NCBI GenBank assembly: GCA_053919585.1
Contig: CM132808.1
From: Euprymna scolopes
Taxonomy: Eukaryota
DNA length: 64,000 bases
Direction: 5' to 3' (one strand)
The notes under the pieces were generated by a model, which ran no database searches, was not told the DNA's origin, and was given only the letters and a program-made list of their open reading frames with translations. Made by a program: the position numbers and the translations under genes. Of the stretch, positions 4,121 through 63,304 are shown one piece after another (position 1 is the stretch's first letter; every line of letters starts with the position of its first letter).

Positions 4121-6013
4121 GAATTTAGTAAAACTCGTTCCGGTAAAACTCTTCTCCGGAAAACTCGACCCCTTTCGCTAGGTAGAAAAACTGGTCCCTT
4201 ATTGAATAAATATCGATTGAAAACACATTTTATGATCGTTCTTGAAGGAGATATTGTTTTTTTTAAAATAGACTAAAAATATATATATATTTTTTTAAAT
4301 AAAATCGATTTTCTAAGTGTCCGTTTTCTACCTAATTGGCTAAGTTCTTAGTGGTTTCACCTATTTTAAAGCGTTTATTATGTTCATAAACGAGACCGCA
4401 TATTTTTTTTTATATTAATATAAAAAGAATTTACTTATTTACTGTTGTTTATAAAAGGGTAAAATCGATTTTTCTACCTCGCCGACTATGTTGTTTGTTG
4501 TTTAATTTATTTGGAATCGTTTATTCGGTAAAGAAAAAAAAACACAGAAAACAAACAAAAAACATGTTGAGTGTTACGTGAGAACGAGAAATAATGTCCG
4601 GTATATCACATCTTAGGGGTCTTGATAATCGCTAAAAAATAGAAAATTAAAGAAATTCCTGAGGGAGATTTGGTTTTAAAAAGAAAATAATAAATTTTAA
4701 TATTCTTTAAAATATAATTTAGAGAGGAGGGGGGGGGGACTATATCTCCCTTCGAAAAACAACCAACAAAAAATGAAATTAAAAAGATTCTTGATAAACG
4801 ATAACGGGATTTTCAATAAAATTGATTAATAAATTTATTTAGTGATTACTTTTTCTCTTAATGATTGATTTTAGAATTTTGAAGTAAAAATTAAAAAAAT
4901 TAAAAATGAGGGGTTTGTATTACTGTACACAGATTCGAAAAAGTTGTCAAAAAAACAAATTTATTCAGCTCGAAAAGCATACAGTGTTTACCGATGTATT
5001 GGAAAATTCAAAATGGCGCCCGACACTCTCTTTAACACGGTAAGTTCAGGAAAAGATGTTATAAATAATAAACTAGACAAAATACTGTTAGAAATTCGCT
5101 CATTATATGTTACCGTGACATAAGTTGACATATATTCGGTGTTTTTAAATAGTATTTTATCTAGTTTATTATTTATAACACCTTTTCCCAAACTTACCAT
5201 GTTAAAGAGAGTGTCGGGCGCCATTTTGAATTTTCCAATACATCGGTAAACACTGCATGTTTTTCGAGCTGAATAAACATGTTACATTGAATAAAAACAA
5301 AAAAATGTATCCAGTTTGGTAGAAAAGTAACTTATCTTGCCTTTGATAATATTTATTTGTTATATATTTGTTTTTTGACAACTTTTTCGAATCTATGTGA
5401 GTGTACAGTAATACAAACCCATTAATTTTTGCAAAATTTGACAGGACGACAATAAATGTTGATAATTGATAAAATTATAATTTTAAATAACGCATGAGTG
5501 CATTTGGTATGAGAGAAAACAAAAACATAACAAAAAAAAAACTATCATAATTAAAAAAAAAAAAAAAAAAAAAGTAACGAAGAATCAACGAATCGCTCCC
5601 TGTTTTTTAATTTTTTTGTTTCATTTTTTATTATTGTTTTTATGACTCCAAAAAACATCGTTAAAATACGAATAAAAAAAATTTGTAATTAACTTTGTAT
5701 GAACATAATAAACACTTTAAAATAAGTGAAACCACTAAGAACTTAGCCAGTTAGGTAGAAAACGGACACTTAGAAAATCGCTTTTATTTAAAAAAAAAAA
5801 AAAAAAAAAAAAAACAATTAACAAGTAAAAATATTTTTTTTAAATATTATGAGAGGGCTATAGTCTATTTTAAAAAACAATATCTCCTTCAAGAACGATC
5901 ATAAAATGTGTTTTCAATCGATATTTATTCAATAAGAGACTAGTTTTCCTACCTAGCGAAAGGGGATAAGTTTTCCGGGGTCGAGTTTTCCCGAGACGAG
6001 TTTTCCGGGCACC
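4121..6013. mobile_element. Non-autonomous foldback DNA transposon, Mutator-like
   Basis: About 270-bp TIRs (4121-4390 vs about 5700-6013) with repeated (CCGG)AAAACTC units. Candidate 9-bp TSD GGACTGGGG/GGGCTGGGG (8/9 match). No ORF. Confidence 0.7.
4911..5420. mobile_element. Palindromic MITE, copy 1 (same family as 36164-36760)
   Basis: Ends GGGTTTGTATTACTGTACAC / GTGTACAGTAATACAAACCC; nearly the whole element is an inverted repeat; the left arm has a deletion; no TSD recognisable. Confidence 0.8.
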
Positions 6014-52288: not shown

Positions 52289-54040
52289 AAATGATAATCA
52301 AGGTGAAAACATTGATTTGAAGTATCCCAATAATATGAAATTAAAAGTTTTCAAAACAAAATTTGATATGAAGGTAGTTCCCAAAGTAAAGCCTCCTATC
52401 TTTTTAACTCAAAAAGTTCACCATCATTCTCAATGCACTTTTACCAGGAATTCAATGACCCATCTCTGCTTCTGATGCATGTCCATGACAGGGGTTGTGT
52501 TACAATATCTTTTATATATAATGGAGGTATGACTCCTGAAAGTTGGGAGATTCTATTTATAAACACTGCCGATAAGAACTGACAAATCAAATTAATTCAC
52601 GTTCTATTATCAACCAATCAGAAACCAGAATTGCTTCATAAAAATTTAATCTTTTAGCATTCCAGCACAATTTTTTCATGTATACGCGAGAAGGATATTT
52701 TGCTCTTTGCTTGCAAAATTATAAAGTCCAGAACCTGTACAGAACAGCGACCCACAGAAAATTCTTTATATCCAGGACTTGTATAGAATAGTTACCCATA
52801 GAAACTCTTCGGAAATTAAACATGGCTTCCAATGGACCCAGTGGTGACTTTACTTCAATGGATCAGAATCAAAATAACATTTTTAGGATATTTACGAAAA
52901 ATAAAATTTTTAGGATATTTACGAATCCAAAACTTACACAAAGTAATTCAGGCACAACTTGAAAACAGAAAAAACCCTAAGTTTATTGAAAAGAATGCAA
53001 CTGTCTTTGCGGAATTAATACAGTGCTTAAATGACAGGAGTCTATTTCTGGTAATGCAATAAGTCTTGGGCAATGGTTGCAAAGCATTGAACATATTAAG
53101 AGAGCATTATTTATCAAAACACCCTAAAATTATCTCTTTATATACTGAACTGACATCTCTAAAACATATAGAAGCAGAGACGATTTCAGATTATAAGGGC
53201 CAAAACAACAGCAAATTCATTAAAAACGTCTGACAAAGTTATTAACGAGTCTGTTGTCTCCATGGTCCTTAAAGGGTTGCTAAGTGATTTTAAGCCAATC
53301 ACCACTGTGATAACTCAGAAAGAAAAACCTATGACTTTTAGTCAATACAAGGTAGAGTTACAAGGAAACCGAGAAAAAGGTCACAAAAAAAAAAAAAAAA
53401 AAAAAAAAAAACAATTCTACAAATATCATGAAATTTAAAAATGCCCACTTAAAAAACATAAAAATTAAATTATACCTTTACCTCGAATAAAAACCACAAC
53501 TTTTCCAAAAACAATTTTTCTACTAAATAAAGAAAGATTATTTGCTATAATAGTGAGTGACCCAATCACAAGAGTTTCCAATGTAGATACAAGAATTTCA
53601 AAGCGGACTCCATTATAAATGTGGAGAGCTCCGTTAGTGAATATACATTTTTATTTTCATGTACGTTTGACACTTCAACAAATAATCACAACTATGTCGA
53701 TTGTGAGGCAACAGCACATGTAATTACAAAGGAATCAGATTTTATCAATTTTGATCCCAACTTTAATCCTCAGTGTCACTAGCCGATGGCAGTCAAGTAA
53801 ACAATATCATTTGAAGAGACGCGATGATAAAATATCACTAAAGAACAATAAAGGTGAATTTTGTTCCTGTATTCGGAAAACGCTCTTCTAATACCGAAAT
53901 TCAAACAAAATATATTTTCTGTACAAGCCGCCACTAAACAAGGTGCAAATATAAACTTTAGCCCCAATAAATCAAAACTGGTGTACCTGAATGGAACTGT
54001 ATTCGATATTAAAGGAAATGGAAGGCAATATTATTTAAAT

Positions 54041-57000
54041 AGATAGATACGCACTAGATATGTCTAGTAGTGCTGCACTTCTAACACTGTATTTGTTCTG
54101 TTTGTGTTTCAGGATGCATAGATCATCCTTTGATGTGTTATGAATAAAGGAAGATACCTATCTATGATCTATGCATCATCGTTGCTGCCGTCAGGAGAAG
54201 GAGTGACGTTTCGACTGGTGTTAACATCTATGACCCATGCATCCATCAACGGCTGATTATGGTGAAGCTCATTTGTCCAGTTCAGGACTGCCTTTGGGAA
54301 TCCCAAGACTTATCGGAGGAGCTCACCGCTGCACTCACCACTACTTTGAACATCCATGCAGACAACGCACACGCAGTCGCCCATGCACCAGCGCCAGCAT
54401 TACAGCAGAAGCTGAAACTGGCCTCACCTAGGATTGGTCTGGGTTGCAACCCCGACCAATGGTCCTCATTCACACGCCAGTGGAACATCTATAAAGTGGG
54501 CATGGCCATCACACACACCACGCTTCCCATAGCCCTATTCAACTGTTGTAAAGATGATCTACGCACATTTATAATGCATGACATCCATGACGATGTAGCC
54601 TCAATGACCGAAGCACAACTGTTGGCAGCCATCAAACGCCTGGCAGTAAAAGAGGATAGCATCCTGGTACACAGGATCAAGCTGAGCAATATGACTCAGC
54701 CCTCAGGCACTGGCATAAGGACACACTTGGCCAGCCTCCGTGGTCAGGCAGTCTTGTGCCAGTATACAGCAAGGTGCAAGGTTGCTGGTTGTGATCACAC
54801 ATTCGACTATAGCGATGAGATAATCAAGGACAATCGGATTCATGGAATCGCAGACCCGGACATCATGGCGGACCTTCTCGGTGATAGCAAGACAGACCGA
54901 ACACTTGATGAGACTGTCAACTTTATTGCTCAGAAGGAGCAGGGAAAGGCCACTCAGTGGTTGGCACCCAGGCTGGGGCTATAGGGCACTCCATCAAGCC
55001 CACACTCAAGAAATCCCCTGGCAGACCACCCTGCTGGGCATGTCGTGGACCAGAGCATGGAGCAAAAAATGATAGAGACACTAGGTCACAGCTATGCCCA
55101 GCCTGGACATTCACCTGCACCAAATGTTCTGTCAGGAGGCACTACAGTTCCGCTTGTAGCAAGTGCACCTCATGTGGTGCGTGGGGACATCGTGATAAGT
55201 CCTCACGTTTTTGTCGTGGCCAGCAATCCACCAACCGCTCATCCAAGCCCCCTCCAGGCAGGACATCTGGGGTACATCATCTGTCAGATGACCCGGAGGA
55301 CATATATACCAAGTCTGTTTTCGATCAGTTGTGCGGGACTGAGGACTGTGGCACATCCACAACTTTTAATGGATGCAATCCTCCCCTTGTACATCACATA
55401 TTTGATGGTGAGTGGGTGGCACGTGCTTCAGAGCCCCACCCTATGATGACTGTCACATTAACCCCATGCCCTGACGACCACGCCATTCTAGACCACCCCA
55501 TCACTAACGGTGAAAGACTCCTCCCTACATCCATCTCCATGATCGCAGACTCAGGTTGTCAAAGCTGCATTATGCCCATTCAACACGCATATGATATGGG
55601 CTTTTCAGACTCCGATATCATACCCGTGCGGCTCACCATGAGAGGGGCTATAAGAGAAGATTTAGGTGTCCTGGGTGGTATAGTGGTCAAAATCTCTACC
55701 ACTGACATGTCAGGATCAGACAGATGCACCAAGCAGCTCACATACCTCTCAAGCAAAATTGACAGGGCTTTTATGTGTAGGGAAGCTCTTGCGGCCTTGG
55801 GTGCTCTTCCGGCTAATTTTCCTTCAATCCCAACCTGGCAGTCACACGCCACCGTGGCTGGAGTAGATGACGAACCCACATGTTCATGCCCAATGCGGCT
55901 GGAAGAGCCCCCACCGTTGCCTACCGACCTTTCTCCAGGGCTGGATGACAGACCTGAGAGTGTGCCAGCCCTCAAACAATGGGTGCTGGACTATTACAGT
56001 TCGTCCACATTCAACACTTGTGAACATCGTCCTATGCGTATGATGCCGGAGGAGCCATTGCGACTTTATGTTGACCCAGAGGCCCGCCCCCATGCTGTGC
56101 ACAAGCCTGCGATTGTGCCTCTTCATTGGCAAGAACAGGTGCTTCATGATTTGGAAAGAGACGTGCGCCTGAGTGTGCTTGAGAATGTTGGCCCAAACAC
56201 TCCTGTGACATGGTGCTCACGAATGGTGGTGGCAGCCAAGGCGGATGGGTCCCCTCGACGCACAGTGGACCTGCAGCACTTAAATCGACATTCCGTTAGG
56301 CAAACACACCATGTTCAGAGCCCGTTCCATCTTGCTGAGCAGCTCCCACAACATACCCTAAAAACTGTGACAGACGCATGGAATGAATACCACTCTGTGT
56401 CAATCCACCCAGATGATCGTCATCTGACCACTTTCATAACACTTTGGGGACGTTACAGATACAGAGTCGCCCCTCAAGGATTCTTGGCTAGTGGTGATGG
56501 ATACAATCAGCGATTCGATGCCATCATTGCTGACTTCCCAGACAAGGTGAAGATTGTGGATGACACGCTAAAATGGGCGATCTCCATAAGAGAGTCCTTC
56601 CAACTGTGTAGATGGTGTGTCCTTCTGTACCGCAACGGGGTCACCTTGAACCCCAAGAAGCTTCAGTTCACTCAGGAGACAGTAGACTGGGGTGGGCTCA
56701 CGATTACACCCACCAACATCTGCCCATCCTCCAAGTTCATAGATTCTGTCCGGAGTTTCCCTACTACATCCTTGGGTGTGAGGACCTTATTGTGACGACA
56801 GACCACAAACCATTGATAAGAGTCTTAAACGACCAACCTCTCACCGACATTGCAAACCGCCGCTTGCTAAACCTAAAGGAGAAGACCCTGCCATACCGGT
56901 TCACACTCATTCACATCCCAAGTCATAAGAACAAGGGAGCCGATGCAGCATCCCGTTACCCGACTTCAGCAGCAAAACAGCTGCAACTACTAAGTGAGCC

Positions 57001-58725
57001 ACCAGAGGTCACCCCAGATTATCTCCCGGCTGACATTGAGGAACTGGCTGATGAGGCGAGCATGTCATTCAGCGCTTGTGCTGCTCTGAACTCAGTCACT
57101 GATGTAGTTACATGGGATATGGTTCGTGAAGCCACATCCTCGAATTCTACGTTACAACAGCTCATGAACGCAATTCAGGAAGGCTTCCCAGACAATTCCC
57201 GGGATCTGACCCTGGAACTGCGCCCATATTTTAGATACAGTGACAGCCTATACAGTGTTGATGGTGTCATATTGATGGGAGAGCGGATTGTTATACCTGC
57301 GTCAGAACATCCTGAATGCCCTTCATGCTGCCCATCAAGGAATAGGCGCCATGACGGCCCGTGCTGCTGACTCTGTATTTTGGCCCAATATATCCAGACA
57401 TTGGAATGGTCTGCGACAGATGTGGTCATTGTAATTTGGTAGCTAAATCCAACCCTCTGCAGCCGCCTGCTGATATAATTCCCCCAGATTATCCCTTCCA
57501 GTGCATCGCCTGCGACTACTTCCACTATCTCAACATGGACTATGTGGTTGTGGTGGACAGATATTCCAACTGGCCGATTGCTTATAAGTCACAATCCGGA
57601 GCAGCGGGGCTCATCAAACGTCTGCAGAAAATATTCGTCACATTTGGTATCCCTGAAGAAATCACATCTGATGGGGGCCCCCAATTTACGGCTGGCGAGA
57701 CATGAGCTTTCTTAGCTACATGGGGGGTGAACCACAGGGTTTCCAGCGTTGCCAACCCCCATGCAAACAATAGGGCGGAAATTGCAGTGAAAACCGTCAA
57801 GCGCATGTTAATGAACAACACTGGGCCTGGTGGTTCTCTGGACACTGATAGATTCCAGAGAGCCATGATTACATACAGGAATTCCATCGACCCTGAGACC
57901 AAAGCCTACCCTGCACTGGTATTCTTTGGCCAACCAATCAGAGACGCTATCCCAATCCCACTTGGGAGGTATTGTCCACACAACACATGGCAAGAAACCA
58001 TGACATTCCGTGAAAGGGCCCTAGCTCGCAGGCACTCCAGAGAACATGAAAAGTGGGATACTCACACCAGACTCCTACCACCTCTACGTGTTGGGGACCA
58101 TGTGTACCTACAGAATCTTGTAGGCAACCACCCAAAGCGCTGGGAGCGAACAGGAGTTGTTGTGAAAGTACGGCAGTTCCACCAGTATGTGGTCCTGGTG
58201 GATGGATCCGGTCGCGTGACCCTACGCAATAGACAGCATCTACGAAAATTCATACTATTTCTGCAGAGGCAGACACCTCTACGGGTACAGCCCCATAATG
58301 CTCCTGCCCAAGGTCAGGGTCTGCCCACCAAGTCTTTGGAACCTCGGCCAATTGTCACCACATCTCCATCACCTTCCGATCAGCACCCTGACACCACAGG
58401 CCCTGACACCACAGGCCCATCTTCGGAGCCTCCACCCCCAACACCCATGGAACCCATGCAACAGCCATCACAGACGCAGCCAGCATCCCACAACCCGTCT
58501 GAGCATAACAGCATCCCTCTACCCTGTGCTGGCGTGGAGCCAGCTCCGGTTCTTACTCCCCACGGAACGCCTCCCATGCCTGAGAAGAAGCTGTCTCGTG
58601 CCCTGGCACGTCTACTACCACATAACGCGGTGGGACGCATTTCTAACACTGTATTTGTTCTGTTTGTGTTTCAGGATGCATAGATCATCCTTTGATGTGT
58701 TATGAATAAAGGAAGATACCTATCT
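54041..58725 (+). mobile_element. Ty3/Gypsy LTR retrotransposon (probably non-chromoviral) with short atypical LTRs, inserted in Copia pol
   Basis: Shared LTR block 54075-54163 / 58637-58725. Gag, PR (ADSGCQS), RT (VDLQHLN; APQGF; IVDDTL), partial RH (TDHKPL) and IN (DYF; SDGGPQF; NNRAE). The Copia frame YYLN|SV is split around it; AATAG is repeated at the flanks. Confidence 0.92.
54259..58636 (+). pseudogene. Gypsy gag-pol, frameshifted; most of RNase H deleted
   Basis: ORFs 54259-54984, 54957-56795, 56612-57370, 57361-57705 and 57727-58683; RT ...SVRSFP jumps straight to YYILGC...TDHKPL. Confidence 0.9.
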
Positions 58726-59314
58726 AATAGTGTAGTCCCATCAAAAATCGCCTGTCATGATTTACAGATATGGCATAAAATTCTTGTGCACTGCAATATT
58801 CCAGATATCAAAAAGTTGCAGAATGTGGTTGACAAAATGAAAATAAGAACTTCAAAAAACTTGACAAACTGCAACGTTTGTACACAAGGTAAAATACCAA
58901 AACAAGATAGACAAGAAGGTCATAAAAATCCTATCACTGGTATACTGCAATTTGAATGGTCTTGTGGAACCGATGAGAAGAGAAAACTTCAGGTATGCAT
59001 TAAATTTTGTATCCAACTACACCGGTTTAATAATAGTCTATTTTTTAAAGAACAGAACAAATCTGATGCCTTGTTAGCAACTAAAAAATACTTAGCTGAC
59101 ATAGCCCCCTACGGTGCAGTAAATGGTACAGAATTCACTAATAAAGACTTTAAACTTTTATTAATTAATCATTGTATCAAACTTGAAAATCGGCCCCTAA
59201 TTCACCTCACCAAAACAGAACTGCGGAAGAATCATGGCAGACACTTTTTTAAACGGCAAGATGTCTACTCATTGATTCAAAACTCCCCAAATCTTTGGAC
59301 ATGATTGCTGCATA

Positions 59315-62118: not shown

Positions 62119-63304
62119 TTTTTTTTACACACATAATTTTCTTTGACATTTGAACAAAACTAAAAAAATGGCTCAAATTGTAAGATCTAAATGATTTGTT
62201 TTTATTTTATATGCTGTAACTTTTATTTTACATATTTGAAGAGATAGATTTATTTATTTTTGAACAGAATTAGACAGGAACTGAATGGATTTTCCTATTA
62301 TATAAAAAAAATAGGGGGAGGATTTGCAATATTTTGGATATATAATGAGGGTATGACTCCTGAAAGTTGGGAGATTTTATTTATAAACACTGCCGATAGG
62401 AATTGACAAATCAAATTAATTCACATTCTGTTATCAACTAATCAAAAATCAGAATTGCTTCATAAAAATTGTATCTTTTTAAGCATTCCAACACATTTTT
62501 TTCATGTCAACACGAGAAAGATCTTTTGCTTTTTGCTTGCAAAATTATAAAGTCCAGAACCTGTACAGAACCGTGACCCACTGAAAATTCTTTATATCCA
62601 GGTCTTGTATAGAATAGGTACCCATTGGAAACTCTTGAAATTAAACATGGATTCCAATTCAAAGCATTTCTTTAAGTCTCACATCAATATTTACAAGAGA
62701 GAGAAAAAACTATTAAATCATGAATGCATGTTTAGCTACCATAGCAATGCAATTTGCAATACCCTGTGATCCATTCAGGCAGATTAAAAATAGGAGCCTC
62801 ATATAAACAATGATATAATAAACCAAAAAATTTAATTAACAACAGGAAAAGTTATTTTCATTTATCTCTTTATTTCATAAAGTAGTTTTAAGGATCAATG
62901 TTCTCTACAGAAACACGAAACAAGCTGTTCACATTTGACCAGTTCTAAGATCACCAATACACTAATGTCTATTTTGTCAGTGATTTTGAATCATTTTCTT
63001 TTCATATTTACTTTCCCTTACCCATTTATATTTGGCCAAACAAGCACAATTAAATATTGTTGCTTTCCCCATTGTAGATTGGTATACATTGCATTAGTTT
63101 TAATTTACAATTTTACTTTAGTTACATATGTAAAGTATATGTATAACATCATATAATTTTGTGATAAACTCTTGTATCGAAATATTGAAAATAATAATAC
63201 AATTTCAGAAGAATGTACTTATTTCGATTTTATCTCCATATATAATAAAACAGACAATAATTCCCATCTATAAAAAACATTATAGGAAAAGAAACACTGG
63301 CCTA

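What the first reader, a model, noticed from the sequence alone, without database searches (positions are those of the whole stretch)
54111..54177. Candidate self-priming Gypsy element: the PBS is complementary to its own LTR rather than to a tRNA
Seen: directly after the 5' LTR end (...CCTATCT, 54163) there is no TGG-type PBS. Instead ATGATCTATGCATC (54164-54177) is the exact 14-nt reverse complement of GATGCATAGATCAT inside the LTR (54113-54126). That LTR tract follows an initiator-like TTCAG and lies upstream of AATAAA, so it is plausibly the transcript 5' end. The complementary tract is absent after the 3' LTR, so it is a PBS-position feature. The polarity is right: the ...GATCAT 3' end pairs next to U5 and would extend into it. 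The LTR tract also has an alternative hairpin (AGGATG/CATCCT). Established: S. pombe Tf1 and related Tf1/sushi chromoviral elements prime by folding the RNA 5' end onto the PBS, followed by RNase H-dependent cleavage. Inference: this element has no visible chromodomain and its RT/PR motifs look unlike Tf1's, so it may be an independent, little-described self-priming lineage in an invertebrate.
Basis: partly seen in the sequence, partly recalled or inferred. Interest (0 to 1): 0.85.

Follow-up and report, generated by a model that had tools for sequence, protein, structure and literature searches.

The report
Self-priming mollusc Gypsy retrotransposon clade
This small Gypsy-type retrotransposon appears to start copying itself with the first ~16 bases of its own RNA instead of a host tRNA, a trick best known from fission-yeast Tf1, here found in a chromodomain-less mollusc clade and backed by leftover replication intermediates in the genome.

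Summary
GATGCATAGATCAT (54113-54126) in the 5' LTR is the perfect reverse complement of ATGATCTATGCATC (54164-54177) at the PBS position.

The LTR is 125 nt (54040-54164), not 90. It ends exactly where the helix begins. No TGG-type PBS exists.

Three lines of evidence support Tf1-like self-priming:
- **Covariation.** Seven lineages (this genome, Mytilus edulis, other assemblies; 37-69% RT identity) each carry a different LTR tract matched by their own post-LTR tract. Positions 1-10 pair in the six tabulated lineages, always starting at the last LTR base.
- **Replication leftovers, this family.** Twelve isolated pieces consist of the LTR plus a copy of the primer. They end at the complement of C54110, A54111 or G54112, the initiator-like CAG. 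They carry a C where full-length copies have A54178, so they were copied from the primer, not from a PBS.
- **Replication leftovers, second family.** Its pieces carry 8-19 further primer-derived bases that full-length copies lack.

A related element in the same genome has a classical tRNA PBS.

No chromodomain was found. LTR ends are TA...TA.

Still untested: cleavage biochemistry, the TSS by RNA, and placement in an RT tree. Earlier scan notes report the same signature elsewhere in this genome.

The parts
54040..54164 (+). 5' LTR, 125 nt, termini TAGATAG...CTATCTA (TA...TA rather than TG...CA)
   Evidence: Other copies match from 54040. LTR ends genome-wide read CTATCTA followed by unrelated flank. 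Full-length copies L061 and L062 have the PPT directly before TAGATAG.
54040..54110 (+). Putative U3, 71 nt, ending in the initiator-like TTCAG
   Evidence: This is the part of the LTR upstream of the primer 5' ends mapped from the genomic pieces. Inference.
54111..54126 (+). Putative self-primer, the first ~16 nt of the transcript (AGGAUGCAUAGAUCAU). Bases 54113-54126 pair with the PBS.
   Evidence: Exact complementarity. Covariation in relatives. LTR+primer-copy pieces end at the complement of 54110-54112.
54143..54148 (+). AATAAA polyadenylation signal, in the 37-nt loop between primer and PBS
   Evidence: RNA-seq depth falls at about 54160-54171 (thin data).
54164..54177 (+). Primer-binding site ATGATCTATGCATC. 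Its first base is the last base of the LTR.
   Evidence: Followed by A54178 in all 18 full-length copies matching the pattern.
54259..58683 (+). Degenerate gag-PR-RT-RH-IN coding region, split into at least 5 ORF pieces (54259-54984, 54957-56795, 56612-57370, 57361-57705, 57727-58683). The last piece runs into the 3' LTR.
   Evidence: RVT_1 and rve hits here. RT_RNaseH, RT_RNaseH_2 and Integrase_H2C2 in full-length copies.
58637..58726 (+). 3' LTR remnant (last 90 nt only). The PPT and the first 35 nt of the LTR are deleted in this copy.
   Evidence: compared with L061/L062. LTR spacing is 4562 here against 5215-5219 in full-length copies.
54038..54042 (.). Possible target-site duplication AATAG (second copy at 58726-58730). 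Ambiguous because it overlaps the first three LTR bases and the last one.
   Evidence: Joining the flanks restores the reading frame of the interrupted Copia-like element (...YYLN|SVVPSK...). Clean 5-6 bp TSDs are seen in L061, L062, L072, L073 and L074.

Best explanation
The window holds a dead copy of a roughly 5.3-kb Ty3/gypsy LTR retrotransposon with miniature LTRs. It primes minus-strand DNA synthesis with the 5' end of its own RNA, as Tf1 does. Proposed steps: transcription starts at the initiator-like CAG (A54111 +/-1). The first ~16 nt fold back over a 37-nt loop that holds the AAUAAA, and they pair with the 14 nt that begin at the last LTR base. RNase H cuts at the conserved UCA|U end of the helix and the freed 3' OH is extended. 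This gives a very short strong-stop DNA (about 37 nt plus primer), which transfers to the 3' R. Plus-strand strong-stop DNA starts at the PPT, copies the LTR and then the attached RNA primer up to its 5' end. Shown here: the exact complementarity; its position flush with the independently defined LTR end; compensatory covariation across seven lineages; the absence of a tRNA-type PBS; and genomic pieces with exactly the structure of plus-strand strong-stop DNA. Inferred: the cleavage, the enzyme, the TSS, and that the pieces entered the genome by end-joining of dead-end intermediates.
For: (1) Exact 14-nt pairing, kept in at least 18 full-length copies. (2) In seven lineages the helix starts at the last LTR base, where the LTR end is defined independently by the 3' LTR, TSD and PPT. 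The arm sequences differ: GATGCATAGATCAT; GTAGCAGTCAT; GGTACTGTATCAGTCAT; AGTTGTACCTATCAT; CCGTGGTCAT; TAGTTTGTCATCAT; AAACCCTTGGTCAT. Positions 1-10 pair in all six tabulated lineages, with 2-4 pair types at positions 5-10. Over positions 5-14, own arms pair 9.3 of 10 against 4.5 of 10 for arms swapped between lineages. Slid registers give 1-9 of 14 against 12-14 of 14 in the true register. (3) In five of the six tabulated lineages the outer end of the helix lies within 0-2 nt of a CAG initiator-like motif. (4) Twelve isolated pieces at different loci, without TSDs, consist of the LTR plus a primer copy. Seven start at LTR base 1. All 12 end within a 3-nt window: the complement of G54112 (4 pieces), A54111 (5) or C54110 (3). 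They read ...GCATCC(T) where full-length copies read ...GCATCA. (5) In a second family (C34 type) such pieces run 22-33 nt past the LTR end, 8-19 nt of it beyond the 14-nt PBS. Full-length copies read differently after the PBS. Two of them end at the G of the CAG or the next base. (6) No tRNA or Rfam RNA was found at other genomic sites of the 14-mer. A related element in the same genome does have TG...CA LTRs and the PBS TGGCGCTACGAACAGGA, so a tRNA PBS is detectable when present. (7) Precedent for capture of replication intermediates: Ty1 LTR inserts at yeast double-strand breaks carry nucleotides found only in cDNA (PMC11372161).
Against: There is no biochemical evidence of cleavage or of an RNA-primed minus strand. 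RNA-seq coverage was too thin (7-23 reads per run) to place the TSS. In the C34-type family the CAG lies 11 nt upstream of the helix, so there the primer would carry an unpaired 5' tail, unlike Tf1. One piece of that family ends 9 nt upstream of the CAG, and three are LTR palindromes that say nothing about the TSS. All full-length copies keep A at 54178 although the primer would template C. This needs an extra assumption: that only strong-stop DNAs stopping inside the helix are productive, or that repair favours the minus strand. The same helix could also serve other roles.
Confidence: 0.85

Rival explanations
1. The 5'-end/PBS helix is a regulatory RNA structure rather than a primer. For example, it could silence the AAUAAA in the 5' R while leaving it active in the 3' R, where the downstream arm is missing. 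Or it could be a packaging or dimerisation signal. Priming would then be done by something else.
For: A polyadenylation signal lies in the loop in most lineages. The hairpin is predicted to be stable: -26.3 kcal/mol, z = -2.9. Covariation alone cannot separate this reading from priming.
Against: The helix starts exactly at the last LTR base in all seven lineages. Priming requires that; a regulatory hairpin does not. No other PBS is present. The genomic pieces join the U5 end directly to a copy of the RNA 5' end, including bases absent from the full-length DNA, which only primer copying explains. The two roles are not mutually exclusive.
Confidence: 0.08
2. A host tRNA fragment or another small host RNA that happens to share the 14-mer primes reverse transcription.
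For: Some Ty1/copia lineages use half-tRNA primers (PMC6317226). The invariant primer end ...UCAU resembles an anticodon-loop cut of a CAU anticodon (my own observation, untested).
Against: Seven lineages have seven different tracts, each matched by its own LTR. None starts with TGG. Other genomic sites of the 14-mer are not tRNAs or Rfam RNAs, though only part of those sites was listed. The pieces continue with the LTR's own upstream bases.
Confidence: 0.03
3. The match is a chance inverted repeat or an assembly artefact.
For: None beyond the general frequency of short inverted repeats.
Against: The chance expectation is about 4e-7. The pair is present in dozens of copies and in independent assemblies of other species.
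Confidence: 0.01

Closest known systems
Tf1 / Tf2 of Schizosaccharomyces pombe (self-primed reverse transcription)
   Same: There is no tRNA PBS. The first bases of the mRNA are complementary to the sequence just downstream of the LTR. Gag and pol lie in one frame (L061 ORF 414-2678 runs from gag into RT).
   Different: No chromodomain. LTRs are 102-171 nt with TA...TA ends, against the TGT...ACA ends tabulated for Sushi-type LTRs (PMC3601003). The paired tract is 9-17 nt. U5 is essentially absent. One family has an unpaired 5' tail on the primer. The host is a mollusc. Cleavage was not tested.
Other predicted self-primers: the Tf1/sushi group (Maggy, Skippy, Cft-1, Boty, sushi), the plant Tcn1 clade, and the Ty1/copia TAR lineage (Houba, Osr-1)
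   Same: All are predicted from sequence by complementarity between the PBS position and the LTR (PMC6317226; PMC6934838).
   Different: Among Ty3/gypsy elements those are chromoviruses, or they belong to Ty1/copia. The papers I could search describe nothing comparable for chromodomain-less metazoan Gypsy elements. Steamer-like bivalve elements are reported with a tRNA-Asn PBS (PMC11046912).
Ty1 cDNA intermediates captured at chromosomal breaks in yeast
   Same: LTR-containing inserts carry nucleotides that exist only in cDNA, not in the integrated element (PMC11372161).
   Different: Here they are germline-fixed pieces in an animal genome with a sharply defined right end. They serve as a natural record of primer identity and length.
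C. elegans K02A2.6 and Ty3 pol proteins
   Same: K02A2.6 is the best fold match (E 4e-22). Ty3 is the best solved relative (7q5b, E 4e-31). Domain order is PR-RT-RH-IN.
   Different: Sequence identity in the fold matches is only about 15%. Tf2 and Ty3 score almost the same as K02A2.6, so the clade is not assigned.

Membership tests
Ty3/gypsy (Metaviridae) LTR retrotransposon | Pol domain order PR-RT-RNase H-integrase with Gypsy-type RT_RNaseH and Integrase_H2C2 domains | tested here: met
   RVT_1 and rve in the window's ORFs. RVT_1, RT_RNaseH_2, RT_RNaseH, Integrase_H2C2 and rve, in that order, in L061/L062. Closest solved structure is Ty3.
Ty3/gypsy (Metaviridae) LTR retrotransposon | Direct LTRs, a polypurine tract before the 3' LTR, and a short target-site duplication | tested here: met
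   LTR pairs in L061, L062, L067, L070, L072, L073 and L074/L078. PPTs of the form GGGGGGAAGGGAGA, GGGGGGAGA and similar. TSDs of 5-6 bp.
Tf1/sushi chromoviruses | Chromodomain at the integrase C-terminus | tested here: not met
   Pfam finds no chromodomain at E <= 0.01 in the integrase and C-terminal ORFs of L061, L072, L073, L066 and L068.
Tf1/sushi chromoviruses | RT/RH/IN phylogeny places the element inside the Tf1/sushi clade | tested here: inconclusive
   No named reference sequences could be loaded. The fold search ties K02A2.6, Tf2 and Ty3.
Tf1/sushi chromoviruses | LTR ends of the TG...CA type | tested here: not met
   Ends are TAGATAG...CTATCTA here and TA...TA in all seven lineages. 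Sushi LTRs are tabulated as TGTYANR...CNTNACA in PMC3601003.
Self-priming LTR retroelements (mechanistic class) | No tRNA-complementary PBS next to the 5' LTR | tested here: met
   Post-LTR tracts start (A)TGA, never TGG. No tRNA or Rfam RNA at other sites of the 14-mer. The positive control, the C39 family, shows a TGG PBS.
Self-priming LTR retroelements (mechanistic class) | The PBS position is complementary to the start of R in the same RNA, and this is conserved through compensatory change | tested here: met
Self-priming LTR retroelements (mechanistic class) | The complementary tract lies at the 5' end of the transcript | tested here: inconclusive
   Supported indirectly: the LTR+primer-copy pieces end at 54110-54112 and at the CAG in a second family. 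RNA reads were too few to show a TSS.
Self-priming LTR retroelements (mechanistic class) | RNase H-dependent cleavage of the folded RNA releases the primer | not testable with these tools
   This needs cDNA intermediates or an in vitro reaction.
Mag clade of Ty3/gypsy | RT phylogeny with Mag/SURL references, and TGT...ACA LTR ends | tested here: not met
   The LTR ends are TA...TA, against the TGT...ACA tabulated for Mag A and Mag C (PMC3601003). The RT tree against references was not possible, so membership stays open on that count.

The most novel reading that the evidence does not exclude
Self-priming may be the ancestral and general replication mode of a large, very abundant mollusc Ty3/gypsy clade. 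That clade would be chromodomain-less, with mini-LTRs of U3+R, almost no U5 and TA...TA ends. The clade would have acquired the mechanism independently of Tf1/sushi. Its dead-end plus-strand strong-stop DNAs and their snap-back palindromes would be recurrently fixed in the germline. Plain genome sequence would then give a base-resolution record of primer identity, primer length and transcription start.
Probability: 0.5. Interest if true: 0.78.

Novelty: new variant of a known kind. Interest (0 to 1): 0.68.

Why it matters
Among Ty3/gypsy elements, self-primed reverse transcription has been tied to chromoviruses: Tf1/sushi and the plant Tcn1 clade. A well-supported case in a chromodomain-less animal clade has two consequences. 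It shows the mechanism is either older or more easily re-invented than assumed. It also explains why tRNA-based PBS finders fail on many mollusc elements.

The LTR+primer-copy pieces are a new kind of evidence. They let primer identity, primer length and the likely transcription start be read from a genome assembly without any experiment, and the same search can be run on any genome.

The extreme LTR economy (102-171 nt, U3 of 38-99 nt, almost no U5, strong-stop DNA of about 37-74 nt) is of interest for how little sequence an LTR element needs.

Tried and rejected
- **RNA reads for the TSS.** The family is transcribed, but only 7-23 reads per run lay on the stretch. No start pile-up could be called.
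- **MAFFT alignment of the R-PBS region (A2).** It misplaced one lineage's arm. Pairs were counted by script in a register anchored on the primer 3' end and the LTR end.
- **Clade assignment.** The AlphaFold model plus the Swiss-Prot fold search did not discriminate K02A2.6, Tf2 and Ty3. PDB gives only Ty3.
- **Loci that gave no 5' LTR-PBS junction.** L069 (Mizuhopecten) and L076/L080 gave no LTR pair. L066 and L071 are 5'-truncated members of the L068 family. P0055 had no DNA available.
- **TGGTGTT at 54216-54222 as a tRNA PBS: rejected.** It lies 52 nt beyond the LTR end (A54164). A primer there would have put those bases into the 3' LTR, which is not seen.
- **The AGGATG/CATCCT alternative hairpin: rejected.** It is not conserved.
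- **Within-family point mutations in either arm (L003, L012, L013, L016).** These are uncompensated, as expected for decay after insertion, and were not used as evidence.
- **The unrooted eight-sequence tree.** It cannot say whether the tRNA-primed C39 lineage is the outgroup.
Full report
**Observation.** The window reads GATGCATAGATCAT at 54113-54126 and its exact reverse complement ATGATCTATGCATC at 54164-54177. TTCAGG lies just upstream (54108-54113) and AATAAA sits between the arms (54143-54148). The tract is missing after the 3' LTR, which ends at 58726 and is followed by ATAGTG. The chance expectation for such a match in a 125-nt LTR is about 4e-7 (my arithmetic).

**Anatomy, with a correction.** Inside the window only 90 nt repeat (54075-54164 and 58637-58726). 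Other genomic copies match from 54040 onward.
- Full-length copies L061 and L062 have the polypurine tract ...GGGGGGAAGGGAGA directly before TAGATAG.
- RNA reads show the same tract as a loose end before 54040.
- About 30 3'/solo LTR ends in the genome read ...CTATCTA followed by unrelated flank.

The LTR is therefore 54040-54164: 125 nt, with ends TAGATAG...CTATCTA. Its last base is the first base of the complementary tract.

The window's copy is dead. Its coding region is split into at least five ORF pieces. A deletion removed the PPT and the first 35 nt of the 3' LTR. LTR spacing is 4562 here against 5215-5219 in full-length copies. The two full-length copies I opened also have broken frames. 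The element sits inside a Copia-like element whose reading frame resumes across the insertion.

**Classification.**
- Pfam gives RVT_1, RT_RNaseH_2, RT_RNaseH, Integrase_H2C2 and rve, in that order.
- The closest solved protein is Ty3 (7q5b, E 4e-31).
- No chromodomain is detected in the integrase C-terminal ORFs of five elements.
- A model of the PR-RT piece (pLDDT 81.7) matches C. elegans K02A2.6, Tf2 and Ty3 almost equally.

The superfamily is clear. The clade is not.

Protein relatives come from Mytilus edulis, Mizuhopecten and unnamed assemblies. Run labels say mollusc. This genome holds over 26,000 first-look candidates of the wider group.

**Covariation.** I fetched relatives with their flanks and defined each LTR end independently from the 3' LTR, TSD and PPT. 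In every case the bases that begin at the last LTR base are the reverse complement of a tract inside that same LTR, and the tracts differ between lineages.

| Lineage | LTR tract | Post-LTR tract |
|---|---|---|
| Window family | GATGCATAGATCAT | ATGATCTATGCATC |
| L068 | GTAGCAGTCAT | ATGACTGCTAC |
| L067 (Mytilus edulis) | GGTACTGTATCAGTCAT | ATGACTGATACAGTACC |
| L070 | AGTTGTACCTATCAT | ATGATAGGTACAACT |
| L072 (Mytilus edulis, identical LTRs, TSD ATAAA) | CCGTGGTCAT | ATGACCACGG |
| L073 (TSD ATTAT) | TAGTTTGTCATCAT | ATGATGACAAACTA |
| Own-genome C34 family (LTR 132 nt, TSD GTTTT) | AAACCCTTGGTCAT | ATGACCAAG(A/G)GTTT |

For the six lineages tabulated by script:
- Positions 1-4 are invariant (TCAT/ATGA).
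- Positions 5-10 pair in 6 of 6 lineages, with two to four pair types each.
- Pairing fades at positions 14-17.
- Over positions 5-14, own arms pair 9.3 of 10 against 4.5 of 10 for arms swapped between lineages.
- Sliding the register gives 1-9 of 14 against 12-14 of 14 in the true register.
- In five of the six lineages the outer end of the helix lies within 0-2 nt of a CAG.

All seven LTRs end TA...TA and are 102-171 nt long.

**Replication leftovers in the genome.** A genome-wide pattern search found 18 full-length 5' ends reading ...CTATCT-ATGATCTATGCATC-A(TCGTTG...). It also found 12 isolated pieces in which the LTR is followed by TGATCTATGCATCC...CCT or ...CCTG and then by unrelated DNA that differs at every locus.
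- Seven pieces start exactly at LTR base 1. Five are truncated on the left.
- All twelve right ends fall in a 3-nt window: the complement of G54112 (4 pieces), A54111 (5) or C54110 (3).
- None has a target-site duplication.
- The C after ...GCATC is not in the full-length element, which has A54178. It is the complement of G54112.

This is the structure expected of plus-strand strong-stop DNA. Such a molecule starts at the PPT/U3 border, copies the LTR, and then copies an attached primer whose sequence is the RNA 5' end starting at the CAG.

**The same test on the C34-type family.** This is more telling, because there the CAG lies 11 nt upstream of the helix.
- Two pieces run 22-23 nt past the LTR end, which is 8-9 nt beyond the 14-nt PBS. 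L086 ends at the G of the CAG and L087 at the next base.
- L084 runs 33 nt and ends 9 nt upstream of the A of the CAG.
- Full-length copies read differently after the PBS (...CTGGAAACC...).
- Three further cases (L085, L088, L089) are palindromes: an LTR followed by the reverse complement of the LTR up to TCAT. That is what results if a strong-stop DNA whose 3' end is complementary to its own interior snaps back and is extended.

Capture of Ty1 replication intermediates carrying cDNA-only nucleotides at yeast chromosome breaks is documented (PMC11372161).

**The tRNA alternative.**
- None of the seven tracts starts with TGG.
- TGGTGTT at 54216 lies 52 nt beyond the LTR end and cannot be a PBS.
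- The window has no tRNA gene.
- Other genomic sites of the 14-mer are either the PBS itself or unrelated repeats with no tRNA or Rfam match.
- As a positive control, a related element of the same genome (C39 family) has TG...CA LTR ends and the classical PBS TGGCGCTACGAACAGGA.
- In an unrooted tree that element joins the branch between the two self-priming groups: (window, L067, L068) and (L070, L072, L073, C34). Without an outgroup the number of origins is open.

**RNA.** Contigs of several RNA studies hold the 5' region. The raw reads were too few for a TSS. Depth falls at about 54160-54171, which fits polyadenylation near the LTR end and hence an LTR that is essentially U3+R. The 90-nt leader folds into the predicted hairpin (-26.3 kcal/mol, z = -2.9).

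**Mechanism.**
- *Shown:* the pairing, its register at the LTR end, its covariation, the lack of a tRNA PBS, and genomic molecules that join the U5 end to a copy of the RNA 5' end.
- *Inferred:* transcription starts at A54111 +/-1. RNase H cuts at the conserved UCA|U. The sequence cannot tell whether the primer ends at 54125 or 54126, because T54126 equals the complement of A54164. Strong-stop DNA would be about 37 nt plus primer.
- *Also inferred:* plus-strand molecules that copy the primer to its very end carry a mismatched ...CC(T) 3' end against A54178. They would fail the second transfer and end up as dead-end DNA that is occasionally end-joined into the genome. This would explain why full-length copies keep A54178.

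**What is known.** Self-priming is established for Tf1. It is predicted for the Tf1/sushi group, for plant Tcn1 chromoviruses and for Ty1/copia TAR elements. A review of LTR structure states that some chromoviruses use hairpin priming, and it tabulates TG...CA ends for Mag, CsRN1, Sushi and Gmr1 LTRs. Steamer-like mussel elements are described with a tRNA-Asn PBS. Searches for self-priming together with molluscs or Mag found nothing relevant. That covers only the open-access library.

Five first-stage notes of this scan report the same signature in other Gypsy copies of this genome. They are unchecked leads, not evidence.

**Limits.** There is no biochemistry, no direct TSS and no reference-anchored phylogeny. 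The end-joining origin of the pieces is an inference. I built no consensus and singled out no copy.

Noticed in passing
window 52491-52804 and 62315-62630; ORF pieces 53680-54039 and 58727-59304: The Gypsy copy is nested in a Copia-like element. Two direct repeats of about 315 nt (88-90% identical, 9824 nt apart) look like its LTRs. Protease-like and integrase-like (H..CNVC) coding sequence continues in frame across the insertion.
   Followed up: partly
G000:C18:99380413-99380666 (L063 300-560): Head-to-head pair of LTR+PBS units of the window's family, joined through an 11-nt spacer (CTGTCGTTGTT). One unit is a 5'-truncated LTR+primer-copy piece ending ...CCTG. Origin unclear; possibly template switching or snap-back.
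   Followed up: partly
L085 (G000:C36:34812159-34812559), L088 (C5:112316960-112317360), L089 (C14:54653445-54653845): LTR palindromes in the C34-type family and two sister subfamilies: an LTR end followed by the reverse complement of the LTR up to the TCAT primer end. This is what self-primed snap-back extension of strong-stop DNA would produce.
   Followed up: partly
L066 10650-10925, L068 10609-11942, L071 about 12228: The 3' LTRs of three copies of the L068 family are all interrupted right after ...GTCATCCTTT by inserted sequence that starts the same way (TCCATATTCC...). The LTR resumes at TCATCCTTTGTGAATAAAG. It is either a shared variant LTR or a preferred insertion or recombination point at the primer cleavage site.
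   Followed up: no
G000:C39:254967-264849 (L077, L081, L083): A related Gypsy family in the same genome has TG...CA LTR ends, the PPT GGTGGGGAGAGG and a classical tRNA-type PBS, TGGCGCTACGAACAGGA. The matched RT-RH stretch has no stops. It served as a tRNA-primed contrast to the self-priming clade.
   Followed up: partly
for example G000:C36:30863123, C4:2446926, C15:34636459, C38:67081194: An unrelated repeat (about 8 listed copies...TTTAGCTCTGATGCATAGATCATCGTATAACA) and another (about 4 copies, TGTCTGGGTGGCGATGCATAGATCATCGGCATATA) contain the same 14-mer as the primer. No tRNA or Rfam match was found; their nature is unknown.
   Followed up: partly
window 53988-53989: Three single-cell RNA reads (run X22) carry a loose end, AAGCAGTGGTATCAACGCAGAG, just before 53989. 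From memory it resembles a template-switch adaptor, which would suggest an RNA 5' end inside the Copia-like flank.
   Followed up: no
G000:C5:126977778 versus L074/L075: In the C34-type family the PBS is polymorphic at position 10. G gives a perfect 14-nt match to the LTR; A (in L074 and L075) gives a mismatch. This could be decay, or the outcome of primer/PBS heteroduplex repair.
   Followed up: no
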